Origin: Lytechinus pictus
Taxonomy: Eukaryota
Assembly (NCBI RefSeq): GCF_037042905.1
Contig: NC_087246.1
Span: forward strand, 33,914,001-33,978,000
Length of the DNA: 64,000 nucleotides
Direction: 5' to 3'
Shown: one piece after another, positions 4,478 to 48,119 of the stretch
Layout: each line of letters begins with the position of its first letter
Numbering within the stretch: position 1 is the stretch's first letter
Translations under genes and position numbers: made by a program
Notes under the pieces: model-generated
Seen by the model: only the letters and a program-made list of their open reading frames with translations
Database searches by the model: none
What the model was told of the DNA's origin: nothing

Positions 4478-5239
4478 CTTGGTACTTAAATTCTACAAAA
4501 TAGTCTGTTTGATTTTATGTTCAGTAAAAGTGTGAACTTCATAAATATTTCCATCTAACTTCATCATTTCCATAACCTTGCTGCGAGTAGGCCTATTCTA
4601 TATTCTATACGGTCTTCTGAACAACATTCCAAGTTGGTATAAATGTGTCTTTGTTTCTGCACCATCACTTTGCTTAACATATCTAATGCCTATATCTAGA
4701 TATCAAATCCTTTTCTTCTAATTATAAAATAATCCTAAACTTTCCTGTTTCCAACCCATTGCGCCACTTCAATGGCCATTCCAAGCTCTCTCCACCCCGG
4801 CCTATTTCTTGCCACTAACTCCTAGTAATATCTGGCCTCGAGATTTTATCTCCCAAATATTAGACTAACAAAGTCCTTTTTATACCAACAACTTTCTATG
4901 TTCAACCTGGTCCATAACAAGACATAAAAACTTAACATTCCAACCATTCTAACTCATTGCATTAGAATCATGTAAATGTTCCAATTAAATATTTGGAAAA
5001 TAACTTAGAATTAATACACTACCACTGTCGCTCGTCTTGAACTCGACTATCATAAAGCTGCCGAATTTCATTCCTTGTTTGGGATTGAATAGAAGAAATA
5101 TAGAAGAAAACATGGTGAGGACTGCTTAAATTCTTCCCTATCCGGGATTGAATGTAATAAACACTGAAAAAAACATGGTGAAGACTGCTTAAATTTGTTC
5201 CCTGTTCAGGATTGAATATAAGGAAACAGCTATGAAGTC

Positions 5240-5440
5240 ATCTCGGTTGGACAGGACGTTCGGTAGACGGTGCCCAGTGTACGCGATGATGAACAGTGAT
5301 GGCTGGTATGGAGTACTGAGTACGCGATGCATGATGACAAGACAGAGTACTGAGTACGCGATGCACGATGGCAAGTACAGAGTACCGAGTATGCGATGCA
5401 TGACGAACAGTACAGGGTGTGGCAGGCGTATCGGCAAGTG
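5240..5440. repeat. Short degenerate tandem repeat (~30 bp, GTACTGAGTACGCGATGCATGATG) inside the candidate LTR
   Basis: About 5 imperfect copies are visible; they explain the repetitive spurious ORFs at 5189-5493. Confidence 0.7.
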
Positions 5441-6148
5441 AAGACCGGCGAGCGAGATGAGTGTGGTGCAACTGAACTTGATTCATCCATCAAGACGTTC
5501 CTTATTCAGGATTGTCAATTGTTCTGCTGGATTGGTGACAATCCTTATTCACGGTATTTTAGACTTCCTTCTGCCGACTGCTGTAACTGTTGGCGACGTT
5601 CCTTATTCAGGATTGTCACTTGTCGAACCTCTCATTTCTGCTGCCGTCCAATATACTTTGTTTGAGCTTGCCCTCTCGATACTTCCAACGCCAGCCGATT
5701 TCGTCGTAGGGAAGGGGGGTCATATTCTTCCATGCACTATACAATAAAATCTACATCCACATTCTCATTTCAATCGACTTCTCTGACTTAAAAACAGTCT
5801 ACACCATTTTCAGAGACACATCATAAAATAACATCTGAATATTAATCTTACAACTACATAAAAATATTCATCTCGTCATTCAGGCTTCAAGCCTAAAATT
5901 TCTATAAAGAACTTCGAAATTCCAGTTCTGGCAAATTTAATTAAAAATTCCTTTTTATAGAGAAAGGGGGATATTATGTAACCTTAAGAAGTTTAAAAGA
6001 AATATTCCTCTCACTATTCTTGCCAAGGTCAAACGCTTGGACTATCAACTGTAAGAATGGACTAAAGAACAAACTCAACTGTCTTGGGGTTCCCTCTGAA
6101 CAAATACTCTCTAAGATGCAAAGTGAAGAAATTTTCACCCCCTGCCCC

Positions 6149-6234
6149 TTTTATACCCCTAGCTATCGGCCCCTATCGCCTGACAAAAACTTGACTTGCC
6201 CGCTTACGTGATTGGCCAAAAGTTTGTGACGTCA
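6149..6234 (-). promoter_or_regulatory. Pol II promoter cluster in LTR U3: CRE (TGACGTCA), CCAAT box, TATA box
   Basis: Minus-strand order is TGACGTCA 6227-6234, CCAAT 6211-6215, TATAAAA 6149-6155, with canonical spacing. Confidence 0.65.
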
Positions 6235-6703
6235 TCACCCACGAAATACAGACTGAACCATTTCCGGTAGGGAATAATCACTTCTAGTGACTAAAATAGG
6301 ATCAATTTATCATAATAGGGAAAAATAGAGCATCAAGATCCTCACTTCAAAGACATTTACAAGGTAAGTGACAATTTATCGAGAAAACTCGCTCCGTGCA
6401 TCGCCGTGCACGCCATTAACCTAACCTTGTCCCACGTACTAAATCCTATGTATTGCTGTGGTTCTAAGAATAGCACAATTCGCCTCTGTTACTATGCTCA
6501 TTGACTGCTGTAGTAAACACACTCAGCTGATTTTACTACGTTCATTCAAGATTCAAAACAAACAACAGCTGTGAGTGGTGGCATTGTATTAAAGTGAAAT
6601 TTTGAGAAGATTTTGTATAATTAATTCTGGCTGGAGGTAAGCACAGATCTAAATAGAAAATATTAAAAGAAAATTTTGAAAATTTTTTTGGGTATTCTTC
6701 ACA

Positions 6704-6716
6704 CTGCCCCCCTCTT
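6704..6716 (-). other. Polypurine tract (PPT)
   Basis: Minus strand AAGAGGGGGGCAG directly followed by TGTGAAG. Confidence 0.7.
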
Positions 6717-7050
6717 ACTAAATCGCTGTCCCAGCGATTCAATTTAAAACACTTACTAGGCCCTATTCCAAAATATACAAACTTTAACAGATTCAATCGA
6801 ATTAATTTCTTGAAACATTCAGATCTAAGAATGGAATACACAGTATCAATACAATTAAAATCGTTTCATCACTTCTTCAACAAATCATCTTACACTTTCA
6901 TTCACATGTATATACAAGGTAATAAGATGATCGCATCAACTCGGCTTCATCAGTCTCTTCGCATGTCATAATAGTTGGCTAGTAATGATAGACCATTCGA
7001 TGTCAAAATATGCTTGTAGAAAATTTGTACTCAAATTGTCAAATTAAAAG

Positions 7051-7849
7051 CTACTTCTGTTCATCGAAATGGTATACTGTCTTCTTTTCTTCATGTACCC
7101 TCCTCTCCCCGTAGGCTGTTACATAAGTAGTTGTGTACACCTCCACTTTATTTACTTGTATGTATCCTATCCGTGGCTTTTTCACCTTCAAGGTTATATC
7201 CACGTCCTCCTCAGTGGTTACCCTGAGTTCTCTCTTATGTGACGTGGAGTCCTCAGCCACCCCCTGACTAGATTCTCCTTGATGCATGGGGTCCTCTTCC
7301 TCCTCCTCAGGTTCTTCATCCCCAGAGTCCCCTGACTCTTCCTCCGAGCTCTCCTCTTCCTCTGCATGGAGGTCAAGTGCGTCCCTATTGTCTTTTTCTG
7401 TTTCCCCTGACTGTTCTTCCGTCTTCCTCCTCCTCCACAGGTACTTCCTCGAGCTTCTTCTCCTTCCTGTCCTCCTGTACCTCATCTTTCTTCTTTTCCT
7501 TCCTGTCCTCTCCTTCACGCTTTCTTTCCTTCCTGTCATCTTTATCTTCCTTCCTTTCCTTGCTCTCCCTTTCTGTCTTCTTTTCTTCCTCCCACTTGTC
7601 CCTTCTCCTCTCTCCTTCACGCTTCCTCAGATGTCCCGTCGTCGCCGCAGTGTAGTTTATATACTTCGCCTCTTGTTTTCTACTATTGTGCATCCTCCCA
7701 AAATGCCTGGTCATCTCCGACCTCCCCTCTGTCTCATATGAGCAATACGTGCATCTGAGGGTCATGGTGGCCTCGTGCTCCTGCATGTGTTGCTGGTACT
7801 TGTACCCCTTGATACTCTTTTTACAAATGTGACAGTACAAATAAGGCAT
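7051..7849 (-). pseudogene. Accessory retrotransposon ORF: 2x C2H2 zinc finger, E/K/R-rich region and acidic tail (frameshifted; the only copy with the full C-terminus)
   Basis: CHIC..HMQEH and CTYC..HFGRMH in ORF 7385-7849; the C-terminus lies in ORF 7051-7620, with a frameshift near 7420-7435. Confidence 0.7.
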
Positions 7850-10752
7850 AAGGTAGTTGTCATAAGTGCTTGTTAATCGTCAGACCTTATGAGCTTAATA
7901 TTTATATCTATTTGGCATCACCCTTTTCCTAGTAGGGTTTCTCCTTCCTGGATCAGACGTCAACCAATTTTTCAGTTTAGGACCAGTGTAGACTTTCAAG
8001 CGGTCAATGTGAATCACTTTGGGCTTACACCAGGGGTGTGAGCGTTCAGATTTTTTTTTTTTTCAGCTTATTTTTGGCCTTCCTCTGTACAAAAAGTATG
8101 GGAGCTCTTTCTATTTCAGACTTTTTCAACACTTCAGCTTTTTTCAGATCTTTTTATTTGTAACCACTCACACCCCTGGCTTACACGTATCTGATTGCTG
8201 TATGCGGTACACAACATCTGACAATCTTTCAATAACCATATATGGGCCACTCCATTTATACCGTCCATCAACTTTGGACACAACCTTCTTCTGCGCAGTA
8301 CTCCATGCAGCCAAACCCAATCACCCTCAGCAAATCTTCTTGGGAAAGTATTACGATCATAAGATATAGCCTGCTTTTCAGCAGCTAACTCAAGTTTCTC
8401 TCTAGCCATTTCATGTGCATCTCTAATTCTATCTCGAAGTTGCTCGGAATAATCCATTTCTCTCTTTCTTCCTGTCCTCCTGTACCTCATCTTTCTTCTT
8501 TTCCTTCCTGTCCTCTCTTTAACGCTTTCTTTCCTTCCTGTCATCTTTATCTTCCTTCCTTTCCTTGCTCTCCCTTTCTGTCTTCTTTTCTTCCTCCCAC
8601 TTGTGCCTTCTCCTCTCTCCTTCATGCTTCCTCAGATGCCCCGTCGTCGCCGCAGTGTAGTTGATATACTTCGCCTCTTGTTTTCTACTATTGTGCATCC
8701 TCCCGAAATGCCTGGTCATCTCCGACCTCCCCTCTGTCTCATATGAGCAATATGTGCATCTGAGGGTCATGGTGGCCTCGTGCTCCTGCATGTGTTGCTG
8801 GTACTTGTACCCCTTGATACTCTTTTTACAAATGTGACAGTACAAATGAGACATCTGCAGTGAAGAAAAGAAAACACAGGTAGTTGTAATAAGTGCAGGT
8901 TAACCGTTAGACCTTATGAGCTTAATCTTTGTATCTTTTTGGCATCACCCTTTTCCTAGCAGGGTTTCTCCTTCCTGGATTAGACATCAACCAATTTTTC
9001 AGTTCAGGACCAGTGTAGGCTTTCAAGCGGTCAATGTGAATCACTTTGGGCTTACACGTAGCTGATTGCTGTATGCGGTACATAACATCTGACTATCTAT
9101 CAATAAACATATATGGCCCACTCCATTTATACTGTACATCAACTTTGGACACACCCTTCTTCTGCGCTGTACTCCATGCAGCCAAACCCAATCACCCTCA
9201 GCAAATCTTCTTGGGAAAGTATTACGATCATAAGATATAGCCTGCTTTTCAGCAGCTAACTCAAGTTTCTCTCTAGCCATTTCATGTGCATCTCTAATTC
9301 TATCTCGAAGTTGCTCGGAATAATCCATTTCTCTCTTTCTTCCTGTCCTCCTGTACCTCATCTTTCTTCTTTTCCTTCCTGTCCTCTCCTTCACGCTTTC
9401 TTTCCTTCCTGTCATCTTTATCTTCTTTCCTTTCCTTGCTCTCCCTTTCTGTCTTCTTTTCTTCCTCCCACTTGTCCCTTCTCCTCTCTCCTTCACGCTT
9501 CCTCAGATGTCCCGTCGTCGCTGCAGTGTAGTTTATATACTTCGCCTCTTGTTTTCTACTATTGTGCATCCTCCCGAAATGCCTGGTCATCTCCGACCTC
9601 CCCTCTGTCTCATATGAGCAATATGTGCATCTGAGGGTCATGGTGGCCTCGTGCTCCTGCATGTGTTGCTGGTACTTGTACCCCTTGAAACTCTTTTTAC
9701 AAATGTGACAGTACAAATAAGGCAAATCTGCAGTGAAGAAAAGAAAACACAGGTAGTTGTAATAAATAGATGCAGGTTAACCGTTAGTCCTTATGAGCTT
9801 AATCTTTATATCTATTTGGCATCACCCTTTTCCTAGCAGGGTTTCTCCTTCCTTGATTAGACATCAACCAAATTTTCAGTATAGGACCAGTGTAGGCTTT
9901 CAAGCGGTCAATGTGAATCACTTTGGGCTTACACCAGGGGTGTGAGGGTTCAGATTTTTTTTTTTTTTCAGCTTATTTTTGGCCTTCCTCTGTACAAAAA
10001 GTATGGGAGCTCTTTCTATTTCAGACTTTTTCAACACTTCAGCTTTTTTCAGATCTTTTTATTTGTAACCACTCACACCCCTGGCTTACACGTATCTGAT
10101 TGCTGTATGCGGTACACAACATCTGACTATCTATCATTAAACATATATGGGCCACTCCATTTATACCGTCCATCAACTGTGGACACACCCTTCTTCTGCG
10201 CTGTACTCCATGCAGCCAAACCCAATCACCCTCAGCAAATCTTCTTGGGAAAGTATTACGATCATAAGATAAAGCCTGCTTTTCAGCAGCTAACTCAAGT
10301 TTCTCTCTAGCCATTTCATGTGCATCTCTAATTCTATCTCGAAGTTGCTCAGAAATAATCCGTTTCTTTCTTCCTGTCCTTCTCCTCTACCTCCTCTTTC
10401 TTCTTTTCCTTCCTGTCCTCTCCTTCACGCTTTCTTTCCTTCCTGTCATCTTTATCTTCCTTCCTTTCCTTGCTCTCCCTTTCTGTCTTCTTTTCTTCCT
10501 CCCACTTATCCCTTCTCTCTCCTTCACGCTTCCTCAGATGTCCCGTCGTTGCTGCAGTGTAGTTTATATACTTCGCCTCTTGTTTTCTACTATTGTGCAT
10601 CCTCCCAAAATGCCTGGTCATCTTCGACCTCCCCTCTGTCTCATATGAGCAATATGTGCATCTGAGGGTCATGGTGGCCTCGTGCTCCTGCATGTGTTGC
10701 TGGTACTTTGTACCCCTTGATACTCTTTTTACAAATGTGACAGTACAAATAA
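7440..10752 (-). repeat. Tandem array, segment 1: Gypsy integrase tail + C2H2 ORF units (~870-1020 bp)
   Basis: Zinc-finger starts at 7849, 8854, 9725 and ~10750. The integrase C-terminus (YSEQLRDRIRDAHEMARE..YD..FAEGDWVWL..PKL..WSGPY..HIDRLK) is repeated in each unit. Confidence 0.9.
8031..8178. mobile_element. hAT-type MITE (148 bp) in an array unit; the same insertion is at 9935-10083 and 27563-27707
   Basis: TIR CAGGGGTGTGAG/CTCACACCCCTG and 8-bp TSD GCTTACAC. Empty sites with a single GCTTACAC are at ~9050, ~26683 and ~47283. Confidence 0.9.
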
Positions 10753-10919
10753 GGTAGAGACTATATTGGCGTCGATCCGGCAGGTCATTAATATTCATGA
10801 GCTTGGAGATCTCGTTCGACCGCTGACGTTGCTCATTAATATTAATATTACGGTAACACATTGGGAATCGCGGGTGCGCCTCACCGCTTTACTGTATGTC
10901 GAGTGCAGTAACAAAATAT

Positions 10920-12061
10920 TTTCAATCCCCATTTATATCAATGTGCATAAAATAGGCGTCGATTCAGCATCTTTGGCGCTAATCCGGCAGTTTTTATGAA
11001 ATAAACCAAAATAATGACAATGAACCCAAATCAATGTGTTGGTTTGTCCAACTTGATGGAGCAGACAGCATATGGAGCTAGTAAAGCAGAAATCATTAGA
11101 GGAAAACGATTCACAACTTGTGTATTTTCAATATTCCCCATTTATATCAATGTACATAAAATAGGCGTCGATTCAGCATCTTTGGCGCTAATCCGGCAGT
11201 TTTTATGTAATAAACCAAAATAATGACAATGAACCCAAATCAAAGTGTTGGTTTGTCCAACTTGATGGAACAGACAGCACGGAGCTAGTAAAGTAGAAAT
11301 CATTAGAAGAAAAAGATTCACAACTTGTTTTTTTTCAATTCCCCATTAATATCAATGTGCATAAAATAGGCGTCGATTCAGCATCTTTGGCGCTAATCCG
11401 GCAGTTTTTATGAAATAAACCAAAATAATGACAATGAACCCAAATCAATGTGTTGGTTTGTCCAACTTGATGGAGCAGACAGCATATGGAGCTAGTAAAG
11501 TAGAAATCATTAGAGGAAAACGATTCACAACTTGTGTATTTTCAATATTCCCCATTTATATCAATGTACATAAAATAGGCGTCGATTCAGCATCTTTGGC
11601 GCTAATCCGGCAGTTTTTATGGAATAAACCAAAATGATGACAATGAACCCAAATCAATGTGTTGGTTTGTCCAACTTGATGGATAAGACAGCATGGAGCT
11701 AGTAAAGTAGAACTCATTAGAGGAAAAAGATTCACAACTTGTATAATTTCAATCCCCATTTATATCAATGTGCATAAAATAGGCGTCGATTCAGCATCTT
11801 TGGCGCTAATCCGGCAGTTTTTATGTAATAAACCAAAATAATGACAATGAACCCAAATCAATGTGTTGGTTTGTCCAACTTGATGGAACAGACAGCACGG
11901 AGCTAGTAAAGTAGAACTCATTAGAGGAAAAAGATTCACAACTTGTATAATTTCAATCCCCATTTATATCAATGTGCATAAAATAGGCGTCGATTCAGCA
12001 TCTTTGGCGCTAATCCGGCAGTTTTTATGTAATTAACCAAAATAATGACAATGAACCCAAT
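10920..12061. repeat. Subterminal tandem repeat of the MULE, ~5.6 x 204-209 bp
   Basis: ATGACAATGAACCC recurs at 11014, 11223, 11428, 11637, 11841 and 12045. Confidence 0.92.
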
Positions 12062-12175
12062 TCAAAGTGATTGCAAATTAACAAGGTTAACATTTTTCTT
12101 TTCTCAAAATATCACAACCCCTACAAGGAAAAAATCAAATCCAACAGACATTTTCCCGCAAAATAACAACGTCAT

Positions 12176-12659
12176 ACCCGGGGAAGGGGGGGGGTTGGGG
12201 CCCGTTACATTGACGAGTGGATACCATGCGCGACCAAAATACACGTAAAAAGGATGTCTTTTTCAAGATACGTGACGTGATAAGGGTGTAAAAAACACTA
12301 AAATAATGAAAAAAGGGTATCTATCTCGTTAGGAAAGTTACGTCGTGTTTAGGGTCAAATTTGCGGGGATGATAAAAATTAAAATGTTTCATAAAAGATG
12401 TCCTTTTCCCCAAAACATTATGTGTTTAGAGTCCGATTTGCTCGAGGTGTGGGGCCGGTGTGTAAAGGTAAAACCGACCACCGAATAAAATATCGCTGTA
12501 CTTGTTATTAAGGGGTTCATTTCAGGGATTACTTCCCAAGAGTATCGTTTTATTTCCAATAATTGTTTAGGGTAGGGTTTCACACGTCAATACTTGTTAA
12601 GGGGTGCATTTTCAGAATGGTATCCACTCGTCAATGGAAGTGCCCCCCCCCCCCCCCGG
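12176..12659. mobile_element. Non-autonomous element with CCGGGG/CCCCGG termini
   Basis: G-run and C-run ends, flanked by the direct repeat ACGTCAT (12169-12175, 12660-12666). Confidence 0.65.
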
Positions 12660-12815
12660 ACGTCATTCCATTTGAAGACGAGGGAGGAGGGGGACAGCCA
12701 GGAGTTGAGGACGGCGAAGAAATAGAAGAGGGAGAAAAGAAATCTTAACTAGAAGGGGAAAAATAGAATGAAAGAGAAAGAAAAATAATAAGGAATGAGA
12801 GGAAGGAGAAAGAAA

Positions 12816-13405
12816 CAAGTGGAATGCCTCTGGCCGTCTCACCTGCATCACGCGATTCAATATAGCAGCAGTGCTGATTTTGAAAACTACTATAACTCGC
12901 ACAAGATGTTCAGTGATACTTGGCTACTCTTATTTCCTCGTTTTATAAACTAGACTAATACACTTATAGAGATATGATGGTAATTCAACAAATACCCCCA
13001 ATTTGTCCAAAGTTCATTGACCCTAAATGACCTTTGACCTTGATCATGTGACCTGAAACTTGCACAGGATGTTCAGTAATACTTGATTACTATTATGTCC
13101 AAGTTTCATGAATCAGATCCATAAACTTTTAAAGTTATGATGGTAATTCAACAGATATCCCCAATTCGGCCAAAGTTCATTGACCCTAAATGACCTTTGA
13201 CCTTGGTCATGTGACGTGAAACTCATGCAGGATGTTCAGTGATACTTGATTAACCTCATGTATAAGTTTCATGAACTAGGTCCATATACTTTCTAAGTTA
13301 TGCTGTCATTTCAAAAACTTAACCTCGGGTTAAGATTTGGTGTTGAAGCCGCCGTCGCCGGAAAAGCGGCGCCTATAGTCTCACTCTGCTATGCAGGTGA
13401 GACAA
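12816..13405 (+). mobile_element. Helentron/DINE-1(HINE)-like element, same family as 232-1325
   Basis: Subterminal inverted repeat GTCTCACCTGCAT/ATGCAGGTGAGAC, terminal hairpin, internal ~160-bp TGACCTTTGACC units, inserted in an A-rich site. Confidence 0.7.
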
Positions 13406-16400
13406 TAAAAAGGAAACGAAAACATGTGGAGATGATAATTAATTTGAAGCTAACACTGCAGTGCTAAATGTGAACAAAATAACTTGGTCCAAAACACATC
13501 ACATAAACTCACAATACCATATCACATATTCATCTACCACTACAGGATGCATACCACTGAGACACGGGGGGGGGGGGGGGGGGGGGGACAATTTGAGTTT
13601 ATCAACATTTGAAAACACAGAACACAATGAAAACATATATTGTATTTACACACCTGAAACAGTGATTCAACATCATGTTTCATTTATTCATTTCATTCTT
13701 CAGCATCTTGAGAGTTTAACATAATTTATCTTATAATCACTTGCATCTTCATGAAAAATGAGAGAATATTTTAGCTCAGTTTTCACACATATTTCTCTAA
13801 GGGTAAATAATGTCTAATTTACACTGCTCTTTGTACAGTCTCCCACCCTGACAGTTGCCTGCACGACAATGCTGGTGATTCACACTTTGATAGGTTGGAG
13901 ATGATTGTGTATAAATGATAGTACATAGAATTTTGATCTCTGTTTTTTTATCGCTGTCAAATTAGTTAAATATCAAACTTGGCAATTGGTCCCCACTAAC
14001 CCATTGAATTCAACCTAGAAAGAAGAAATTTCACAGCAGTTTAGTCAAATACATTTGTACTAGTAAAAATGTCTTTATCATCTAAAATTTTGTAGGATTT
14101 ACCATAACTGTACACTATCCTCAACAGTTGGATCCTTATCATCTGATTTGTACATGTACAAGCAATGGGTCCACCATGTTTACACATTTGGTAGTATTTC
14201 TATTGTATACCCAGTGGTCACTTTGAGGGAATGTATGGTAAGAGTACAAAAGCTTTCATCTACTGGGTGGGCGTTTCATAAGGCTGTTCAAAAGATACAA
14301 TTGACTTTACAAATGACAGTGAAAGCTCTTGTGCAACCAGTATGATAAATGAGAATAATAGTACCAAAGAAAATACCCCCAGTTGTTCTTAAAGTAATTT
14401 GTAACTTACCAATAGTTTTGTGAGCCTCCCCGTCCATATTTCTCTCCTGGGCATGGAGTAGCAAATTAAAGTGCTCAATCATTTATTTATGACACCGCCA
14501 CACTGGTGTTAATGCGGATTAAGCATTTGTAAGTAATACTTTCCCCTTAAATTGATCAAATTTGTGTTACCATGGCAAGCGATAAAAAATCTTAAAAGAC
14601 CCACTCATTAATACTGTAAGTTGGAAAAATCATCACTTATACATTTTCAAGTTTCTTCATATTATATCCGTGTAATGCTTTACTTTCATCATAATTATTC
14701 TTCTTTCCTTTATTTGCTGCTACAGATATTCTTACAGAATCAAGAACGTGTGATTTTAAACTCGTCCAACATTTTCTTATCACATGTTTACATTTAATAA
14801 ATTACAAGCCAATCTGAAAGACTACTGGAATGACTATTTTTATTATGTGTTTTAGTTCTACAGTATTCACTCAGTGAAATGAATGTGTGGCTACACAGCA
14901 AATAAAGAAATCAGATAACGTACATTTTACTTCAAATTATGCCAGAAAATGTAGTATTCATATTAATCACATGATGGAAAAATCCTACAAAGTTAACAGA
15001 CATGTTTTAACTGGAATTATTTCAGAATAAGAAGAGCTTCATTGACACTAAAGATAAAACAATTTTGCAGTTTATTGACCACTTTACCAATTTGAGATTC
15101 CCATCACACTTTTCAAACATTTAAACTTTGTCATTATTCATGAAATTTTGTTAAAATTTTCAATAATCTGTTTCTCTGATTTTTTTGGTTTCCTTCAAAG
15201 TAATTTACAAGGGTTGGATTGCCCTTTAAACAATAATTCACTCGCCCTCTACCTTTAACCTCATATGATCAGAACTGTAGCCAAAGGTCAATAAAAATGC
15301 CTTCACTCATTCTTAAGCATTACTACATTAATGCAATATTTGACCAAAGTGTAATGGAATCTATTCATACCATCATTCTCCAAGTAATCATGGAAAGAAT
15401 AAGTGGGACAAACAGATGGACTGACAAACAAAATGCCCCCAGCAGGCCATCGCCTTTGTTGGCCGACGCATACAACATACTAGATTACATCATAAATTGT
15501 CTTAAAGAAGACCTTAACAGCGTAATTTCAAGGATTTAGAACAGTGCTCCAAAATTGGTATACCTATAAATAGTATATGGAAGCAAAGCCATGGCCTGTA
15601 TTAAAGATCATTCAATTTAGTTTATGAGAAAAATGTATTGTAACCAAATTCTCTCCAAGATAATCTGAACTCATCTTGGAGGCGTTTCACAAAGAGTGTT
15701 GGACTAAAATTGGTACTTGAATTCCCATTTGCATGTACAATATAACGCATCAGCTCATTGGTCAGATTATGCACAGGGTGAGTGTGCTACCAAGTATCCA
15801 TCAATGACACAAAGCGTTAAACAACATGTGCACGTTTGCGTCTAAGTTTGACTTTCAGTCACACTTAAATCTTTGTGTAACACCACTCTGGTGATATATG
15901 AATTACACAAACGTTTTCATTAAAAAATCAAATCTCCAGGATTGTTAAGACATCGCCATTAATTTTGAGGGTAAATAAAGAGCATTTTCTGGAAATAAAA
16001 AGCTCCATAATTCATTCAATTGTGCTCAAAATCATAAATAGAATTGTTTGCTTCACAATATGCATGGATGTCAAGGCATATAATTAAAAAAATGGAAATG
16101 TCATTATAGGTTTATAGATGCATTCTGTCTGTTCTGTTCGTATCACAATGAATCCATTTGCGATACATTTACATGCATTCATTGGAAACTGGAGTGGATT
16201 GGTCATTAGTACTTTTTCTTCACCTATATCATGAAAAGCAATGTCTCTGAGCACGACATTTAGGTAATTCTAACCAAACCAACATATTTCTCATTATTAT
16301 GAAGCAGTAATAGGCTAATGAAGAAAAAGATTGAAATTACTTCCATGCGATGTGTATCAAACTAAATAATTACGGAGGGTTGACCAAAATGGCCTCTCAT

Positions 16401-16614
16401 CCTGTGTATATCATAATCGTATAAATGTCATATCCGTGGCTAAAACCTTACAGGTATATAGCATAGTAAACAAAGTGTTGGCTGAGTTACAACCCCCTTA
16501 TCATGGACAAACAAATGACATAAAAGAAAGTAAATTATATCCATGCAATATGCAGGGAAATAATTAATTACAGGGGGTTAACCAGAATGGCCTCTCGTCC
16601 TGTTTAATGTCACT

Positions 16615-16914
16615 CTATTCATACTGTGCCCTGCAAATGGGGCACTCATAGTCTCCTTCTGGTGGCTTGGTTAAAGCGACGCACTGCAGATGCATCCACC
16701 TCCCACAAACATCACACTGGGTCCATGTATTAAACTTCTTTTGCACATTTCCTTTCGCACCTTTTCCAAGACACTCAAGCATGTCACAGACCTTTCTTTG
16801 ATTTACTGGTGCCACTGCGTGGCTCAGGAGAGCATTCCACACATATATGCGCATTGCTGCAGCATAATGTCCAACAGTAGGAGGATCTATTCCTTGTACC
16901 ACAGCTAGTGCATT
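16615..16914 (-). CDS. Last exon of the MULE gene: PHD finger
   Basis: CDMLEC..WTQCDVCGRWMHLQCV..YECPIC (C4HC3). Acceptor TTCTAG|AAT at 16914 is phase 0 and joins the Ulp1 exon in frame. Confidence 0.75.
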   Translation of the reverse strand, partial: NALAVVQGIDPPTVGHYAAAMRIYVWNALLSHAVAPVNQRKVCDMLECLGKGAKGNVQKKFNTWTQCDVCGRWMHLQCVALTKPPEGDYECPICRAQYE

Positions 16915-17324
16915 CTAGAAGAGAATGAATTAAAATATATTCCACATTAAAGTCATTGTTAGATCTTATTACATATATTGACCTTAAAGATAAACTTTAT
17001 TCTATTAATGAAATTTCATTACAAAATAAACTGGTTCAGGGCACTCACTAAATGTTAATTATACACTGCATTTTGTCTGCCTCTCCAATATTCCTCCCAG
17101 GCCCCTACAGCTCCACCTTTTTGTCAAGATCCATTAGACGGCCAACCTCAGCACCCATCAATATCCATGAGCAAAAATGGAAAATTGATTTTGTAAGATA
17201 ATTCAAAGGAGTACCCTGCATCTACTCAGGGTACTGAAAACAATGGGCAATAAATCATTAAATGCCTAATAATAGTTGCAACAAATGTGCATTAAATCAA
17301 AGCATCATAATGAAAGTGATAAGC

Positions 17325-18737
17325 CAAGGCTCCACATTAACTTTTTTTGGTGGTGGCCCGTTCGGGCCACCAAAACCATCAAATAATTTTTTTTGGTGGC
17401 CCGATATTAAAGTTTGGTGGCCCGAAAAATATAAAGAAAAACATTAAAAATGAATAAAACAAACTTCTGAATTTATTCTGCAGCCACTACCACTAAGTTC
17501 CTTTCACTTTATACATCTTAGTGTAGTAGGTTTCACGGTACACCATGTATCTTTCTTGGGCATATGTTGGTCCTGAAAAGGACCACCCAATCTCGACGTT
17601 TCGACAAGTGTGTTCTTGTCGTCCTCCTGAGGAGGAAGAAGCCATTACATATATTTTCAACAGCTGTGGCAACAGTCTATTCTGACTGGAATATAATTAA
17701 AAGCCAAGCATATAATTTTCACTTACCTTTTGGGAATGGCACATTTCTATTTTTATATCCTTTAGTTTGTATTATTTTATTTTCAGTAGAAACATATTTT
17801 TTAATCAGGCATATTCAATGGGAAGGGGTATAAATGGTTTAACCACTGTCAAAAAAAAATGAAAGAAAAAAAAAGAAAACGGAAAAAACTATATTGGAAA
17901 AAAAGTGTGAGAAAAGTCCTTCCCTATATTTGCCAAAATGTTGGGAAAAAAAATCACATTTCATATCAATGAAATGCCTTCCCAAAGTATTTACTTTCTC
18001 AAGAGTGGTTTAAGAAGTCATTTATAAACAAGAAAGAAAGAAACTGTCTGTTTGTTTAAGGCTAGAAAATACACAGCTTCGAAAGAAACCAAGTATCAAC
18101 ATACATACAAATGCACACGTGGGACTGTGATGTACTTGCCTATGTGTTTTTATGTGTATTAATTCATGTGGAAATCGGTCTTTTTTAGTCAAAAGAGAGG
18201 TCATAATTCCTCTTCTTAATACTTGCAAATAATCAGGGTACACCAGATTTTCGTAATATAGACTGTAGAATTTCATTTCATTGGTGTAAAAGGTGACTTT
18301 GACTTAGATTTTCAAAGTTCTGTGGAAGATTTCTCAGCAGCAACATTTTTTATCGCAGCTCCTCGAGTCTGAATAGGCTGAGCTGGATCTAGAGCACAGC
18401 TGTATGCAGTGGCTTCATGCAAAGCTCACGCCAGCCGGCCGGCGCGGCTGGCTGGATAATAGCTACTGTATGCTATAGCTGTAGGCCTAATATGCAAACT
18501 GTGTGTGTGTGTATTTGTGTGTAGATCAACAAAAAAGGCGCATGACGAACTGGCTTGCAATTTGAGCTGTAGAAAGTTGATAAATGCGTGCAAAATTGGG
18601 AGAAAAATTGCGCTACTTTGAAAATTATTGGTTGCCCGATTCGGGCCACCAAAACTTAACATTTTATCAATAATGGTTGCCCGAGGTGAATTTTTGGTGG
18701 CCCCGGGCCACCGGGCCACCGCTAATGTCGAGCCCTG
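17325..18737. mobile_element. Non-autonomous TIR element with 7-bp TSD (P/hAT-like CA..TG ends) in a MULE intron
   Basis: Imperfect TIR CAAGGCTCCACATTAAC / CAGGGCTCGACATTAGC, subterminal GGTGGCCC motifs, TSD GATAAGC (17318-17324, 18738-18744). Confidence 0.8.
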
Positions 18738-18873
18738 GATAAGCACAAGAAGTATGATTGCAATGATATCCGATGCTTAGGTTGGCCTTCAAATGATCTG
18801 AAAGAGGTGGGCCTAATGCCATTGGCGTAATGACATCTGTCCGTGCTGCATTTCATCTTGTAAGTTTATTTAA

Positions 18874-19472
18874 AGGACAAGTCCACCCCAACAAAAACTT
18901 GATTTGAATAAAAAGCGAAAAATTCAACAACCATAACACTGAAAATTTCATCAAAATTGGATGTAAAATAAGTTATGGCCTTTAAAGTTTCGCTTCATTT
19001 CACAAAACAGTTATATGCAAAATTGCATATCTCGGTCAGTATGCAAATGAGGAACTGATGACATCACTCTCTCACTATTTCTTTTGTATTTTATTATATG
19101 AAATATTTTTATTTTTCTCATCATTGTCATGTGAAATGAAGTTTCATTCCTCCCTGAACACGTGGAATTCCATTATTTTAACATTTTGTGCTTCAGGCAA
19201 GGAGGTCGAAATCGTCACATTCGTAAAAATTGAAATATTGTATAATTCAAACAATAAAAAACAAAAGAAATAATGAGTGAGTGACATCATCGACTCTCTC
19301 ATTGGGATGTAACTGGCTCGTTCATATAACTATTTTGTTAAAACTAAGCGAAACATTGAAATGTCATAACTTTCTAATTTTACATCCGATTTTGATTAAA
19401 TTTTAAGCATTGTTCTTGTCTGATTTTTCTCTATTGATTCAAATCAACATTTTTCTGAGGTGGACTTGACCT
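18874..19472. mobile_element. Kolobok-like MITE (TTAA target)
   Basis: TTAA|AGGACAAGTCCACC...GGTGGACTTGACCT|TTAA. Related copies are at 40637-41208, ~23179-23390 (partial) and 35629-43933 (split). Confidence 0.8.
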
Positions 19473-20243
19473 TTAATTTTCTATGATTCCTTTACTTATA
19501 TCCAGATAATTCTGGATCATCATGTGTCACTACAAGATTAAGATATCACTGACCTAGCTATGATGCATATATGCACTAGGTCTCATGAAACTGAAATTCA
19601 CAAGACTACATATCCCATCGCCCAATGACCTGTGACCTATGAACTTTAACCCCAAAATCTAAACAAGATTATTTATTCATGGTGATTCATTCTTGTGGTT
19701 TACTTATCATATATGAAAGCTAGATAATGTACATGAAATGAAAAGAAACAGAAATATAATTTATTTTGGGGGTATTTATATAGAAAGGGTTTGTCAGGCT
19801 CATGATATCTCCCAAGCACTTTACAAATTTATCATTATCATGGTCACAACTTAGCCATAAGAAATACACACATATTTTGTACCCATTTTGTACTTGGCAT
19901 GCAGAGAGTGCCAAATGTGGAGTTGCATCGTGCTATAGTATTCTAATGTAAAGGTAAAACATTAAGCTCTCAACCTTTCGATAGAAAGTGAAGTAAATAA
20001 ATGACTATACCGCAATATCTTGACATATTGCTATGGGGAAAGAAGAATTATGGAATTCAATGAAACCTAGTTTGCAACAAGTACTTGTCAGTTTGTTACA
20101 GCTGCTTAAAAAATCTACTACATGATAAAGGTTCAATATCAATTTCAGTTACGTTTTCTTCATTATAATTCAATTTACCTGACCTCTAATTGATGATTCA
20201 TTAGTATATCAAATAGATTAACTTTACAAAGTATTATTCTCAC

Positions 20244-20364
20244 CAGCATGACAAATGCCCCACAAGAATGACTATCTGTCTGCTTGGCAGATTTAAGATG
20301 CCCGATCGTCCATTCTTTGCCATGGAGGTCACCGGTTTCTATGCCTCTGTGTTGCATGTAGCTT
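20244..20364 (-). CDS. MULE gene exon with Ulp1/SENP (peptidase C48)-type catalytic Cys motif
   Basis: CAG| ...WTIGHLKSAKQTDSHSCGAFVML |GTGAGA; Q-x-D-x-x-S-C-G-x-F-V motif. Confidence 0.7.
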
Positions 20365-21621
20365 CTGTGATTATAAACAAACAGAAAAAGATAATTCTAC
20401 AAGCAGTACATTTTCATTTGGATGACATTAAGAAAAAAAGTACTGGGCAATTCCACAGGTTGGTGAAAAATTGCAAATTTAGCATTACAAATTTCAACTA
20501 TTCTTTTTTTGTCCTGCAAAAACCATGAAATTTGTGGAATCATATCAAAGTAAATCTGTTACCAATCTTTAAAATCTACAAAGTCAATGGACTCATAATT
20601 TGAGCCATTTTCTTGCTAAAAGTTTGAAAAGGGCTATGATGTAACAGTGCCTGTGGGGATAAACAACCTTGGAACATGTAAGATTTAAATAAAATTTGAT
20701 CTTCAATGTTCCACAAACCATGTTCCATTGTGGAAATACAAAACAAAACCAATATGCTGAAAGTTGTTAATGAAATCATTTTCATGTACAATATGAAACC
20801 TGATGCCTCAAAACCAATTAGTCACTAAATTTTTATTTTATTCTATTTTTATTTACTTCCATTTTATTACTATTATTATTTTTTTTTTTTGGGGGGTCGC
20901 TAATCTGAAACCCGAATTTCCAAGCTGTCAAATGATATATATAACACTTTCACTCAAGTTTACTAGAAATTATATAAAACTCATGCTGAAATATTATTTA
21001 CAGCTGTCAATGACATCTATATGCGGACATACTTTGTAACTCCTGTGTCAAGCTGCAATGGAAATATTACAATATATTGCAAATTCATAGGCACACACAT
21101 CTCACATTTCTCAGTTGTCTTTGTGCCATTGATCACCTAACATACTGCCAAACAACCTGAAAGGCATATCTTTGGGGCTAGGGATAGCAACTACTGATAC
21201 AGACAATTTATATGTCATGAAAATTTTGATAATTGCTGAAATCTTCAGCAAAATTTGAAATAAATCCCAGTTCAAGGGGGGGGGGCATGACACCATAAAC
21301 ACCATGCAGAATCTATTACTTTAATCTTATGTTGCCTCAATTGAGAGATGAATAGGTTATTTAGGGGCATTTCACTGTATATATATATATAAACCTGAAA
21401 ATGAGAAAGGCACATATCATATGTACATATATAATTATTTTCCAGGTGGAAAACCAAAACAATCGCATATATGTTTAGCAATAATCCTGATTTTTAGCCT
21501 ATATTTCAGAGACAAAAGCATTGAAAGTATGCAATATAAGATTCACATATATTCAACAAGTGGAAAAAAATTATAGAAAATGATATATTTCTATAAGAAA
21601 TATTTATGCATATAATTATAC

Positions 21622-24535
21622 CTTAAATTCAGGGAATCTCAGAACTTCTTTCATAAGTATTCTCGCCGGACATCCCTTCTTCCTTGATCCCTGAAGCCTC
21701 CTCCGTCTCTTCTTTGACCTTGGATGATCACTCTAAAATTGAAATTAAATAGAATACTGTATTAATTTTCATTCCAATTCAATAATTAAAACCATTACCA
21801 ATTCAATTTACAAAAAAATATGCCTATATTCATGTCACAAGCAGTGTGTTACGATGTGTCCATCATAACATAACAAACAAAATAACAAATGTCAACAGAT
21901 TCCTTTGGTTGGTTCAAATATATGTACATACCTAATTAGTGTATGGCTTCAGTAGTGATGATGTTAATGCTTTAGTGTTTAAAGCTTTGTATGTTCAGCG
22001 CATGTTCAGTTATAAATTTTCCAGTCATTTTTGTGTGTTCAGCTTTTAACATTGATAAATCATGTACTCATAATTTTCATGTGCTCGATTGTCCATTATA
22101 TAAACATGAATTTAGTTTGACATAATACTCTTTCAGCACCGCTTTGTTCGAATTACCCGATAGATATTTCATTTGTACATTATTAATGTTTTTGAGAACG
22201 ATACATCATTCTTCGTCTTCTTCTTAATATCATTATCATTCTTTTTCTTCTTCATTGTCTGTTCTTCTCCTTCGATTATTTCCCTTCTTCCTTTTTTCTT
22301 CTCCTCCCCTCCTCTTCACCTTTCAATGATTCCTTTGTAATATTTCATTGATGCTTCTGTTTATTCTAACAATTTTTTTTCATTTATTGTTCGCTCAAAA
22401 CTGCTTTTTTAACATTATATTATGTTCCACATGGCCCCAATAGCAATCAGTCTGTAAACTGTTTGGGCTTTTTAATCGTGTATAAATAAAATCAATCTTA
22501 TGTTATCTAATGAATACAGTTGCAGTCACGCTCAAACTTGTGTTGATTTTAGCACATTTTAACACATTTCCCCGAGTAAACAGTTGTCAAATTATAAGCC
22601 ATCTTTTTCACATCCCATATTAGTAGGCCTATACTTCTTTAAGCATACATGTAGGTCAACAAGAGCCCCTGGAGGCAGGATTTCACCCGGATTTCACAAT
22701 CTTCCCATTGGGCAGAGGCGTTCATCCCACCAATGAAAATATTGAGGGGGGGGCAAACATATCGGTTCCCCCCCAATAATTCTGCATGTTCTACTGAAAA
22801 CCTGTACAGAAAACCTTGCAGAATTATGAAAATGTTTTGCCAACATGTTCAATATTTTGTGTTCACACACACATTACTACCCCCACCCCCCTTAGACTTT
22901 GGACTTACCTTTAGTTCTTCCTCTCTAGCGGTTTTCTGTCTATAAGCAGCGCATTGGTTTTTATTGCGCCCATACATACAATTCATTTTGTATGTACCAA
23001 CATGAACAATGATGAAAGGCACTCCATCATCTGGAATTACTGATGACGATGTCTCACCTACATCATGAAACCTCACTAGGCCTAGATGGTTTACACCTTT
23101 GAAAGAAATAAAACAGTAATTATGAAATTGCTGCCTATTTGATAAGATTGACTTGGAAGCTGTAAATCATGAACTTAAAGGTCAAGTCCAGCTTAGAAAA
23201 AGTTTATTTGAATAAATAGACAAGAATCAAACTAGAATAACGCTAAAATTTTATCACATCAAATGTAGAATGATAAAGTTATGCCATATTAAAGTTTCGC
23301 TTAATTATTTTTCAAAAAACAGTTTAATGCTCAAAAAAGTGATATGCAAATAAGAAAATCGATGTCACTCACTATTTCTTCTATTTACTGCAGCGCTTCT
23401 CAACCTTTTTTTACTCGAGGACCACTTTGACTCTCAAATTTTTTTTGAGGCCCACGTATTATGTCAATGTAGATTATTCTCTGTAACCATGGAAACTGTT
23501 ATTAGATCCTAGTACAAAGATACTTGAAGGGGAAGATCGGACACTTCCACGATTTTTTGAAACGCCCGATAAATCCTTATTTAGGACGCCCATTAAGGGC
23601 GCCCACTTGAGTTGAGTAAGTAAACCCTCGCATATTATTGGCACGCGACAGTGTAAAACAATATATTTATGGGGAAAATGAGAGAAGGGAGTTTGGAGAC
23701 GGCTCAAGGGTGGCGCATGGAAATAATTCCACGTTTTATTTCCAAGAAACCTCAGAAAATATATTTATCTCAAATTGAAGGGGGAAATAATTGAGAAAAA
23801 AATTGAAATGTAAAAATCATCAATTCCTTCAACCCTTCACCATTTCTCTCAATATGTTTTGTAAGGTCAAAAAAGGTTGTTAGTTACTCAACACAGTAGC
23901 CTGTAGGGCACTCTTCTCGAGCATTTCATTACATGGTCTATGTACCGGTACTGTCCGATCTTCTGCTTGTAGTATCTTTGAATAGTAGTAGATCTAGATA
24001 TCTTTATTTAAGGCAAGTAGTACTAACGTAGTAGTAGTACCGTATGTGACACAGTCAATGAAAGACGACAGTTTTAACGTTACTCCCCTTTAACGTTAGG
24101 CCTAACAAAATGAAAATTCTTTAACAATCTGCTGCATGCATGCGATATTTCTGCAGAAAGTTCATAGAAAGTTCATGAAATGATAAAGTTCTTAATAGGC
24201 AAAGAGCTGCATTGTAAAGGCGGTAGAATAGTACATTTTAATCCAACCATTATAACTAACAAGTTGGGCATACCATTTTGAGGAACATCATCTAACGTTA
24301 GAGCATCCTTCTTAGCGTCAGGCCGAGGCCCCGGCTCGGTGGCATTGCCATTGTACCACTTGTAGAGATCGAGATGGAGTCCGAAGTTTGGGCTCTTCCT
24401 CTCGCCAACAAATTTACCCCTATCCACTTCATACAGTTTAATGAAATGTTCCGCTTCACCTAATGAAGAGACCCAACCATTAATATGTTGGTTTGGGTCC
24501 TCCCGAGACCATACATTCGTCCAGGAATCCTCCAT
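21622..24535 (-). CDS. MULE gene 5' exons (24274-24535, 22909-23096, 21622-21732): CaRF/ALS2CR8-like N-terminal domain
   Basis: GT-AG junctions with consistent phases (1, 0). The joined peptide contains IPDDGVPFII..CMYG..KKGCPARILMKEVLRFPEFK, which resembles the CaRF domain as I recall it. Confidence 0.7.
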
Positions 24536-24688
24536 GACGACAGTCGACGTGACAGAGTCTCACATGTCTCGCTCGATTCTAAATTGGCGCGCGTTTTATA
24601 CGTCATGAATATTCATGTCCGTATGCTACCGGCAGTTTACTCATGAATATTAATGACCTGCCGGATCGACGCCAATATAGTCTCTACC

Positions 24689-27600: not shown

Positions 27601-27813
27601 TTTTGGCCTTCCTCTGTACAAAAAGTATGGGAGCTCTTTCTATTTCAGACTCTTTCAACACTTCAGCTTTTTTCAGATCTTTTTATTTGTAACCACTCAC
27701 ACCCCTGGCTTACACGTATCTGATTGCTTTTTGCGGTACACAACATCTGACAATCTTTCAATAACCATATATGGGCCACTCCATTTATACCGTCCATCAA
27801 CTTTGGACACAAC
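24689..27813 (-). repeat. Tandem array, segment 2 (integrase tail + C2H2 units)
   Basis: Zinc-finger ORF starts at 25583, 26487 and 27355. ORF 25636-25929 shows WSGPY..VIHID.LKAY..RRNPARK..PKRYKD. Confidence 0.9.
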
Positions 27814-27969
27814 TAATGTTGTAAATCGGACCAATAATTGGATCGAAAATCGAATCGGTAGTTAAGCTTCAAAAATCGAAATCGAATCGAAAATCGAATC
27901 GGCGAAATGAAAAAACAAAGGAATACATTAAAATCTGCTGGCGGTCGTGCGCGCATCACAAAATGTTGA

Positions 27970-48085: not shown

Positions 48086-48119
48086 TCATGAATCTTTGAG
48101 GTATTGCCTCCCATTTCCA

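What the first reader, a model, noticed from the sequence alone, without database searches (positions are those of the whole stretch)
4531..7849. Gypsy-like element with a C2H2 zinc-finger gene in the env position
Seen on the minus strand: integrase GPY/F tail, stop, ~50 nt, an ORF with two C2H2 fingers plus charged and acidic tail, then PPT and a TG..CA LTR with CRE/CCAAT/TATA. Established: errantiviruses carry env here. Inference: this lineage instead encodes its own transcription-factor-like or anti-silencing protein (DNA-binding fingers plus acidic domain) that might act on its long LTR.
Basis: partly seen in the sequence, partly recalled or inferred. Interest (0 to 1): 0.8.

Follow-up and report, generated by a model that had tools for sequence, protein, structure and literature searches.

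The report
Sea-urchin retrotransposon's zinc-finger third gene
The flagged stretch is the dead 3' end of a sea-urchin Ty3/gypsy-type retrotransposon whose family carries, where insect gypsy elements carry env, a conserved gene for a two-zinc-finger protein; here the front half of that gene has also been copied nine times in tandem and kept under selection.

Summary
The window is Lytechinus pictus chromosome CM073227.1.

Three points fail or stay open. The ORF is broken by a frame change. The LTR end at 4531 and the CRE/CCAAT/TATA promoter are unsupported. There is no gag or RT in the window.

This copy is the last of nine ~0.9-1.0 kb tandem units, each an integrase tail plus the front of ORF3. 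The array was later split by two DNA-transposon insertions.

The family-level idea holds. Three intact elements in Diadema setosum and D. antillarum have gag-PR-RT-RH-IN, then a homologous 265-326 aa ORF3 49-62 nt after integrase, flanked by 4.1-5.4 kb LTRs.

A splice acceptor abuts the ORF3 start codon in all three lineages, which suggests a spliced subgenomic mRNA, as for env.

The finger domain is under purifying selection among the nine L. pictus units; the integrase tails are not.

A repeated 21-nt motif in the LTR is shared by L. pictus and D. setosum.

Function as a DNA-binding regulator of the LTR is inferred, not shown.

The parts
4564..6703 (-). 3' LTR of the relic. It starts TGTG at 6703. 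Homology to the D. setosum LTR is traceable to 4564.
   Evidence: PPT/LTR junction conserved with L002, L003 and L004. Collinear conserved blocks with the D. setosum LTR. No second copy in the window. Family terminal motif absent.
5494..5615 (-). Two exact copies (5494-5514 and 5595-5615) of the 21-nt motif CAATCCTGAATAAGGAACGTC. Three degenerate copies lie in the 63-bp repeats at 5081-5228.
   Evidence: Four copies per LTR with 1-2 mismatches in D. setosum, none in D. antillarum. Zero matches expected by chance.
4564..4920 (-). LTR blocks conserved between L. pictus and D. setosum (4835-4920 and 4564-4624), including a TATA-like box. A candidate core promoter or R region.
   Evidence: (E 2e-7 and 1e-4) and alignment A3.
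6704..6716 (-). Polypurine tract (AAGAGGGGGG plus CAG) abutting the LTR.
   Evidence: equivalent tracts in L002, L003 and L004.
6721..6739 (-). Conserved stem-loop (8-9 bp stem, GGA loop) just 5' of the PPT.
   Evidence: compensatory changes at 3-4 pairs. 19 metagenome loci carry the same signature.
7051..7849 (-). Broken by one frame change, and lacks the acceptor tract.
7895..8454 (-). Integrase C-terminal tail of unit u1, equivalent to D. setosum IN residues about 349-477. Broken by one frame change and one nested MITE insertion.
8031..8178 (.). 148-bp MITE nested in the integrase tail (TIR CAGGGGTGTGAG, 8-bp duplication). The same insertion sits in two other units.
   Evidence: (family D14).
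7455..10754 (-). Tandem array, part 1 (units u1-u4). Each unit is an integrase tail, a spacer with splice acceptor, and ORF3 codons about 1-130. Holds RefSeq model LOC135153216.
10755..24688 (.). Nested DNA transposon, non-autonomous, with perfect 50-bp terminal inverted repeats and a 9-10 bp duplication. It splits the array inside a unit.
24689..27813 (-). Tandem array, part 2 (the rest of u4, then u5-u7). Holds RefSeq model P0158.
27814..46502 (.). Nested hAT-like insertion (8-bp duplication GTTGTGTC) with BED-finger and transposase-like ORFs at 31585-35067.
46503..48088 (-). Tandem array, part 3 (u8, u9). The upstream edge of the relic is at 48088; no pol lies beyond it. Holds part of RefSeq model P0004.

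Best explanation
SHOWN: The region is the 3' remnant of a Ty3/gypsy-type (Metaviridae-like) LTR retrotransposon. The family is present in distantly related sea urchins (Lytechinus; Diadema). Its members carry a third gene, ORF3, between integrase and the polypurine tract. ORF3 encodes a 265-326 aa protein with four parts: an N-terminal pair of C2H2 fingers with a conserved extension, a long K/R/E-rich helix, an acidic/Ser-rich disordered region, and a small conserved C-terminal beta domain.

In this locus only the integrase tail, ORF3, stem-loop, PPT and part of the LTR survive. A unit made of the integrase tail plus the first ~130 ORF3 codons was amplified to nine tandem units. The array was later split by two DNA-transposon insertions.

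INFERRED, fairly strongly: ORF3 is translated from a spliced subgenomic mRNA whose acceptor abuts the start codon, as env is in errantiviruses and retroviruses.

INFERRED, weakly: the protein is nuclear and binds DNA through its fingers and adjacent basic helix. It acts on the element's own unusually long LTR, perhaps at the repeated 21-nt motif, as a transactivator-like or anti-silencing factor. The acidic region and C-terminal domain would recruit partners.

My confidence is about 0.9 for the identity and anatomy, 0.6 for splicing and 0.35 for the LTR-regulator function; the single figure given is a blend.
For: Identity. Organism and locus. Array structure. Transposon junctions with duplications and TIRs.

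Family. phmmer over 1.84 billion proteins found small proteins of the same architecture. D. setosum L002 and L004 and D. antillarum L003 carry gag(CCHC), PR, RT, RNase H and IN(H2C2, rve, p58_C), followed by ORF3. They are flanked by LTRs 99.8% identical and 4.1-5.4 kb long. An ENA contig has an integrase gene upstream of the homologue.

Selection. D. setosum copies give dN/dS of 0.33 for ORF3 against 0.07-0.17 for gag, pol and IN. ORF3 is intact in D. setosum and D. antillarum although synonymous sites are saturated.

Protein. AF2 pLDDT exceeds 90 for residues 1-100 and is 57-81 for the C-terminal beta region. The nearest PDB sequences are CTCF, ZFAT and ZNF64 fingers (E 3e-7).

Splicing. A pyrimidine tract plus YAG ends exactly at the ATG in L. 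pictus units and in both Diadema species. In each D. setosum copy it is the only such site in the 7-kb internal region.

LTR. The 21-nt motif is repeated in the L. pictus and D. setosum LTRs.
Against: No binding, localisation or expression data exist.

Two fingers alone give little specificity, and C2H2 fingers also bind RNA and proteins.

The 21-nt motif is absent from the D. antillarum LTR although its ORF3 is intact.

No convincing shared 5' splice donor was found.

The fold search gave no significant match, and none at all for the C-terminal domain.

The D. setosum dN/dS for ORF3 rests on only 13 substitutions.

The family's clade within Ty3/gypsy could not be determined with these tools.
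Confidence: 0.6

Rival explanations
1. ORF3 is real and element-encoded, but it works on RNA or on integration rather than on transcription. It could be an export or packaging factor for unspliced genomic RNA (as Rev, or as CERV of Cer1). It could also be a tether that directs the integration complex to chromatin.
For: The long K/R/E-rich helix and fingers fit RNA binding as well as DNA binding. An element that splices out a subgenomic RNA needs a way to export unspliced RNA (PMC10309623, listed). A conserved stem-loop lies just downstream of ORF3. The conserved C-terminal domain could dock on Gag or IN.
Against: The best sequence matches are DNA-binding tandem fingers. Acidic regions are typical of activators. 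There is no homology to any known export or targeting factor.
Confidence: 0.3
2. In L. pictus the nine-unit array is no longer junk. The finger modules have been co-opted, as one or more host genes whose exons are the units, or as separate small proteins. Lacking the acidic and C-terminal parts, they could act as competitors or repressors at the family's binding sites.
For: Finger codons 1-85 in nine units show 14 synonymous against 9 non-synonymous variable sites. The pooled integrase tails show 7 against 33 (Fisher p 7e-4). Mean pairwise difference at codon position 2 is 0.003, against 0.02-0.09 in the neutral parts. All nine finger frames are open. Acceptor-to-donor lengths of 369, 366 and 390 nt are all multiples of three. 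RefSeq models join the units in frame.
Against: Counts are small. The array is riddled with transposons. One model starts in a 333-bp satellite. The model names are low-complexity artefacts. Transcript support could not be checked. No orthologue from another species turned up. Gene conversion from active elements could mimic constraint, although it should then also show in the integrase tails.
Confidence: 0.25
3. The array is a neutral satellite-like amplification of a retrotransposon fragment. The apparent constraint is sampling noise and the gene models are annotation artefacts.
For: Each unit drags along a non-functional integrase tail. A MITE was co-amplified in a two-unit higher-order repeat. 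Tandem repeats are common in this window.
Against: The codon-position bias is specific to the finger domain, with the integrase tail as an internal control. Indels in the coding part are in-frame only.
Confidence: 0.35
4. The finger ORF is a host exon or a one-off capture that merely lies next to retrotransposon debris.
For: RefSeq annotates host genes here.
Against: The same ORF sits in the same position in three intact Diadema elements and beside an integrase on an ENA contig. All high-identity 'host' proteins map to this array. One of them, P0003, has no contig on record and carries a variant absent from the window, so it could not be placed. All other hits are generic multi-finger proteins at 23-33% identity.
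Confidence: 0.03

Closest known systems
Errantiviruses (insect gypsy, ZAM, Idefix; Metaviridae with env)
   Same: The order is gag-pol, then a third ORF between integrase and the PPT/3' LTR. A splice acceptor sits at the start of the third ORF, implying a subgenomic mRNA. The integrase has a GPY/F module. (Established knowledge.)
   Different: ORF3 is a soluble two-finger, highly charged protein, not an envelope glycoprotein; no env family was hit. The LTRs are 4-5 kb rather than a few hundred bp. The hosts are echinoids. The clade relationship was not testable.
Regulatory genes of complex retroviruses (foamy-virus Tas/Bel1, deltaretrovirus Tax, lentivirus Tat/Rev)
   Same: A 3'-located extra gene, presumably expressed from spliced mRNA. 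The DNA-binding-plus-acidic architecture resembles a transactivator acting on the LTR. This is an analogy from established knowledge.
   Different: No sequence or fold relation came back from the Pfam, PDB or Foldseek searches. The function here is untested.
Accessory ORFs of other LTR retrotransposons (CERV of C. elegans Cer1; captured ORF3s of bdelloid elements; plant Tat/Retand/Ogre extra ORFs; orchid Ty3/gypsy demethylase domain)
   Same: They set a precedent: Ty3/gypsy lineages acquire and keep extra genes between pol and the LTR (papers listed: PMC10309623, PMC5408684, PMC11963269, PMC9289625).
   Different: None of those listed is a C2H2 finger protein. I found no paper describing this ORF3.
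Host tandem C2H2 zinc-finger genes (CTCF-like fingers; TE-targeting ZNF families)
   Same: The finger sequence is closest to CTCF, ZFAT and ZNF64 fingers. The L. pictus array strings finger pairs into multi-finger models. Sea urchins have large ZNF repertoires predicted to bind TEs (PMC10547256).
   Different: Here the fingers are encoded by the transposon itself. The modules are separated by ~70-residue charged linkers, and at DNA level by integrase-tail 'introns'.

Membership tests
Ty3/gypsy (Metaviridae-type) LTR retrotransposon | gag with CCHC knuckle, then PR-RT-RNase H-IN in that order | tested here: not met
   Absent from the window, so the locus is a fragment. Met in the relatives L002, L003 and L004.
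Ty3/gypsy (Metaviridae-type) LTR retrotransposon | Integrase C-terminal GPY/F (p58_C / SH3-like) module | tested here: met
   The window pieces are 54-66% identical to D. setosum IN residues 349-477. Pfam Integrase_p58_C scores 24.5 bits in the window (below the cut-off of 27) and 54-55 bits in the relatives.
Ty3/gypsy (Metaviridae-type) LTR retrotransposon | Paired LTRs with TG...CA ends, PBS after the 5' LTR, PPT before the 3' LTR | tested here: inconclusive
   In the window the PPT and the TGTG start are present, but there is no second LTR, no PBS, and the end cannot be defined. All features are met in L002 and L004, and largely in L003.
Errantivirus (env-bearing gypsy) | Third ORF encodes an envelope glycoprotein | tested here: not met
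   ORF3 hits only C2H2 finger families. The AF2 model shows fingers, charged helices, disorder and a small beta domain.
Errantivirus (env-bearing gypsy) | RT phylogeny within the insect errantivirus clade | not testable with these tools
C2H2 zinc-finger proteins | C-X2-C-X11-12-H-X3-4-H units with the beta-beta-alpha fold | tested here: met
   There are two units. Pfam zf-H2C2_5 scores 28.5 against 27 in the window. zf-C2H2_7th_ZNF462 scores 31.6-40.1 against 27 in Diadema. Cys and His are invariant in alignment A2. AF2 pLDDT exceeds 90.
Retroviral-type transactivators (Tas/Bel1, Tax, Tat) | Sequence or fold homology to a named transactivator | tested here: not met
   No such hit in Pfam, PDB sequence or Foldseek searches. 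The likeness is functional analogy only.
Domesticated (co-opted) transposon gene | Purifying selection on an immobile copy | tested here: met
   with small counts.
Domesticated (co-opted) transposon gene | Orthologous copy in related species, and transcript evidence | not testable with these tools
   No echinoid genome or RNA-seq search is available. The protein searches returned only L. pictus models.

The most novel reading that the evidence does not exclude
A retrotransposon-encoded finger protein has given rise, in L. pictus, to a new multi-finger host gene cluster. Tandem amplification of a unit (ORF3 front half plus integrase tail) set this up: the element's own ORF3 splice acceptor and a cryptic donor turn each unit into an in-frame exon. 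The products lack the acidic and C-terminal domains. They could act as dominant-negative competitors at the family's LTR motif, which would be a self-derived repressor.
Probability: 0.2. Interest if true: 0.8.

Novelty: new variant of a known kind. Interest (0 to 1): 0.62.

Why it matters
Extra genes in LTR retrotransposons are rare windows on how these elements deal with their hosts. Outside env, very few are understood.

A conserved, selected, probably spliced gene for a finger protein would be an invertebrate parallel to the regulatory genes of complex retroviruses. It sits in elements with 4-5 kb LTRs that carry conserved repeated motifs.

It also bears on the zinc-finger/transposon arms race, because here the transposon side owns the finger.

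The L. pictus array adds a possible case of a new multi-finger gene born from transposon parts.

It has a practical side as well. Three RefSeq models here carry misleading names ('H3 lysine-79 methyltransferase-like', 'glutamic acid-rich protein-like').

Tried and rejected
Protein searches.

Contigs without context. ENA contigs for P0127, P0140 and P0046 came without DNA and with uninformative neighbours.

LTR end. Local alignment to the last 300 nt of the Diadema LTRs gave z below 1. The family terminal motif is absent and there is no PBS-like site in the window.

Promoter.

5' splice donor. No shared strong candidate was found.

PBS identity. There is no tRNA gene in the window to compare with.

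C-terminal domain. No fold match.

Troyka retroelements, which are abundant in sea urchins, were considered and rejected. They have short LTRs, no GPY/F module and no extra ORF.

GC-rich metagenome elements share the stem-loop/PPT signature but have no ORF3 homologue, and their 3-4 kb IN-PPT spacer has no Pfam hit.

First selection count. It used a mis-framed alignment and gave a spurious pN/pS above 3. It was corrected.

The script printed the bounds of two reading-frame pieces of a broken integrase tail. I reused them as references, and together they imply where a frame change lies. Searches printed the upstream regions of all units as they stand, which shows what u1 lacks. My working notes also mention frame relations.
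Full report
**What the window is.** The finger ORF matches RefSeq models of Lytechinus pictus. The encoding contig is chromosome CM073227.1 of GCA_037042905.1, at about 33.9 Mb. L. pictus is a camarodont sea urchin.

**Check of the observation.** The following reads on the minus strand.
- An integrase C-terminal tail is present. Its pieces are 54% and 66% identical to residues 349-398 and 428-459 of a Diadema setosum gypsy integrase. tblastn covers residues 349-477 of 481.
- The tail ends in a stop at 7895-7897. After 45 nt an ATG at 7849 opens an ORF with two C2H2 fingers. Pfam zf-H2C2_5 scores 28.5 bits against a cut-off of 27.
- A K/E/R-rich stretch, an acidic stretch and a C-terminal segment follow.
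- The finger part and the acidic/C-terminal part lie in different frames. ORF3 (7051-7849) therefore carries one frame change.
- A polypurine tract at 6707-6716 abuts an LTR starting TGTG at 6703. This junction is conserved with three Diadema elements.
- The LTR has no partner in the window. Its homology to the D. setosum LTR is collinear but stops at 4564.
- The terminal motif shared by three family members (CTCGCGYYACA, followed by the primer-binding site) is absent. The end at 4531 is therefore unverified and the LTR is probably truncated.

**Surroundings.**
- A unit of 870-1030 bp occurs nine times. It holds the integrase tail, a spacer and ORF3 codons about 1-130.
- The units lie at 7455-10754, 24689-27813 and 46503-48088.
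- The three blocks were once one array, because their edges fit together in unit coordinates.
- Between blocks 1 and 2 lies a 13.9-kb element with perfect 50-bp terminal inverted repeats and a 9-10 bp target duplication. Between blocks 2 and 3 lies an 18.7-kb hAT-like insertion with an 8-bp duplication.
- A 148-bp MITE sits in the integrase tail of three units. This shows that amplification went on as a two-unit higher-order repeat.
- Six of the seven complete integrase tails show one frame change and one shows none.
- No gag, protease, RT or integrase core exists anywhere in the window.

**Relatives.**
- phmmer of the finger domain against 1.84 billion representatives returned mostly generic multi-finger proteins. 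It also returned a handful of small proteins that match end to end.
- Two of these share the whole architecture, including the C-terminal segment: D. setosum XP_072176396 (326 aa) and D. antillarum XP_071495538 (265 aa).
- Their loci, and a second D. setosum copy, show gag (CCHC), PR, RT, RNase H and IN (H2C2, rve, p58_C). ORF3 follows 49-62 nt after the integrase stop.
- The flanking LTRs are 99.8% identical and are 4.1, 4.3 and about 5.4 kb long.
- An ENA contig has an integrase gene upstream of another homologue.
- Diadema is a diadematoid, far from Lytechinus within Euechinoidea.
Of the four high-identity 'host' proteins, three (P0001, P0158, P0004) map to this very array; the fourth, P0003, has no contig on record and could not be placed.

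**The protein.**
- Alignment A1 shows invariant or near-invariant Cys and His, a conserved T-L-T-L linker, and a conserved E-A-x-Y...A-S extension after finger 2.
- AlphaFold2 gives pLDDT above 90 for residues 1-100 (two beta-beta-alpha fingers running into a long helix).
- It predicts helical and disordered charged regions, and a four-stranded C-terminal beta unit at pLDDT 57-81.
- The nearest solved sequences are CTCF, ZFAT and ZNF64 fingers (E 3e-7).
- Foldseek gave no significant match, and nothing for the C-terminal unit.

**Expression (inferred).**
- A pyrimidine tract plus YAG ends exactly at the ORF3 ATG in L. pictus units u2, u3, u5, u6 and u8, and in both Diadema species. The surrounding spacer is otherwise unalignable.
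- In each D. setosum copy this is the only YAG in the 7-kb internal region that is preceded by at least 75% pyrimidines.
- This is the arrangement by which env is expressed from spliced subgenomic RNA in errantiviruses and retroviruses (established knowledge).
- I could not identify a shared donor.

**Selection.**
- Between the two D. setosum copies, dN/dS is 0.07 for gag, 0.17 for PR-RT-RH, 0.12 for IN and 0.33 for ORF3. The ORF3 value rests on 6 synonymous and 7 non-synonymous differences.
- Between the two Diadema species synonymous sites are saturated, yet ORF3 is intact in both.
- Among the nine L. pictus units, finger codons 1-85 show 14 synonymous against 9 non-synonymous variable sites. 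Variable columns by codon position are 8, 1 and 14.
- The pooled integrase tails show 7 against 33, giving Fisher p 7e-4.
- Mean pairwise difference at codon position 2 of the fingers is 0.003, against 0.02-0.09 in the neutral parts.
- The charged region looks relaxed (1 against 7).
- All nine finger frames are open.
- Acceptor-to-donor lengths are 369, 366 or 390 nt, all multiples of three.
- RefSeq joins the units in frame.
- An earlier mis-framed count was wrong and was replaced.

**Cis elements.**
- A 21-nt motif occurs twice exactly and three times degenerately in the L. pictus LTR. It occurs four times per LTR in D. setosum and is absent in D. antillarum.
- Further blocks, one of them TATA-like, are conserved at 4835-4920 and 4564-4624.
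- A stem-loop just 5' of the PPT is conserved, with compensatory changes.
- The stem-loop/PPT/TGTG signature retrieved 19 metagenome loci. Eighteen are GC-rich contigs; eleven of them carry distant gypsy-like RT and/or IN (seven with IN 3.1-3.8 kb upstream of the signature) and none an ORF3 homologue. One is an AT-rich contig with a 4.3-kb LTR and the same primer-binding site.

**Mechanism.** I commit to the following.
- The family's ORF3 is an accessory gene expressed from a spliced subgenomic RNA.
- Its product is most likely a nuclear DNA-binding regulator that acts on the element's own long LTR, in a transactivator-like or anti-silencing role.
- The anatomy is shown. Splicing is a fairly strong inference. 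The target and the effect are a weak inference.
- Rivals: an RNA-export, packaging or integration-targeting role; co-option of the L. pictus array as host finger genes; a neutral array with artefactual gene models.

**Comparison with what is known.**
- It works like a three-gene gypsy or retrovirus in layout and probable expression. It is not an errantivirus by its ORF3.
- No relation to retroviral transactivators was returned by any search.
- I found no paper describing a C2H2 ORF3 in Ty3/gypsy elements. Troyka elements differ.
- Clade placement could not be tested.

- No echinoid genome or transcriptome search was available. Copy number in L. pictus, orthology of the array and transcript support are therefore unknown.
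- One search printed the bounds of two frame pieces of a broken integrase tail, and these were reused.
- Searches printed the upstream regions of all units as they stand.
- Those places are not repeated here.

Noticed in passing
window 6721-6739 (-); L002 ~11742-11760; L003 ~10923-10940; L005-L023: A conserved stem-loop (8-9 bp stem, GGA loop) lies just 5' of the polypurine tract. It shows compensatory AU/GC changes. It is shared by the echinoid elements and by 18 GC-rich marine metagenome contigs; eleven of these carry gypsy-like RT and/or IN.
   Followed up: partly
window 5494-5514, 5595-5615, 5081-5228 (-); L002 2351-2651 and 13486-13786: The 21-nt motif CAATCCTGAATAAGGAACGTC is repeated in the LTRs of L. 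pictus and D. setosum, although the LTRs are otherwise almost unalignable. It is absent in D. antillarum, whose LTR has different 76/156-bp repeats.
   Followed up: partly
window 10755-24688: A 13.9-kb non-autonomous DNA transposon with perfect 50-bp terminal inverted repeats and a 9-10 bp target duplication. It has no ORF of 130 aa or more and contains a 204-bp satellite (10916-12069).
   Followed up: partly
window 27814-46502: An 18.7-kb hAT-like insertion with an 8-bp duplication. It holds a BED-finger ORF (34360-35067) and transposase-like ORFs (31585-33569), apparently in pieces.
   Followed up: partly
window 8031-8178, ~9935-10083, ~27563-27711: A 148-bp MITE (TIR CAGGGGTGTGAG, 8-bp duplication) was co-amplified with the array units, giving a two-unit higher-order repeat.
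   Followed up: partly
window 49224-51554 and 46503-48088: The ORF of a 333-bp satellite (7 copies) supplies the N-terminus of RefSeq XP_063951684. The RefSeq names of the array models ('H3 lysine-79 methyltransferase-like', 'glutamic acid-rich protein-like') look like low-complexity artefacts.
   Followed up: partly
L002, L004 (D. setosum), L003 (D. antillarum): Integrase is in an ORF separate from PR-RT-RNase H. It is in a different frame in D. setosum, and in the same frame with an intervening stop in D. antillarum. The LTRs are unusually long (4.1-5.4 kb).
   Followed up: no
window 1565-4477 (-): Just beyond the LTR lies a run of minus-strand ORFs without Pfam hits. It includes a 246-bp coding-like tandem repeat (2868-3594). 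It is possibly another mobile element that truncates the LTR.
   Followed up: no
L009, L011, L021, L010, L016, L022, L005: GC-rich metagenome gypsy-like elements have a 3.1-3.8 kb spacer between integrase and the PPT. The spacer has long ORFs on both strands and no Pfam hit. The host organism is unknown.
   Followed up: partly
window 360-1120 and 12894-13302: The same 163-bp satellite appears in two places in opposite orientation.
   Followed up: no
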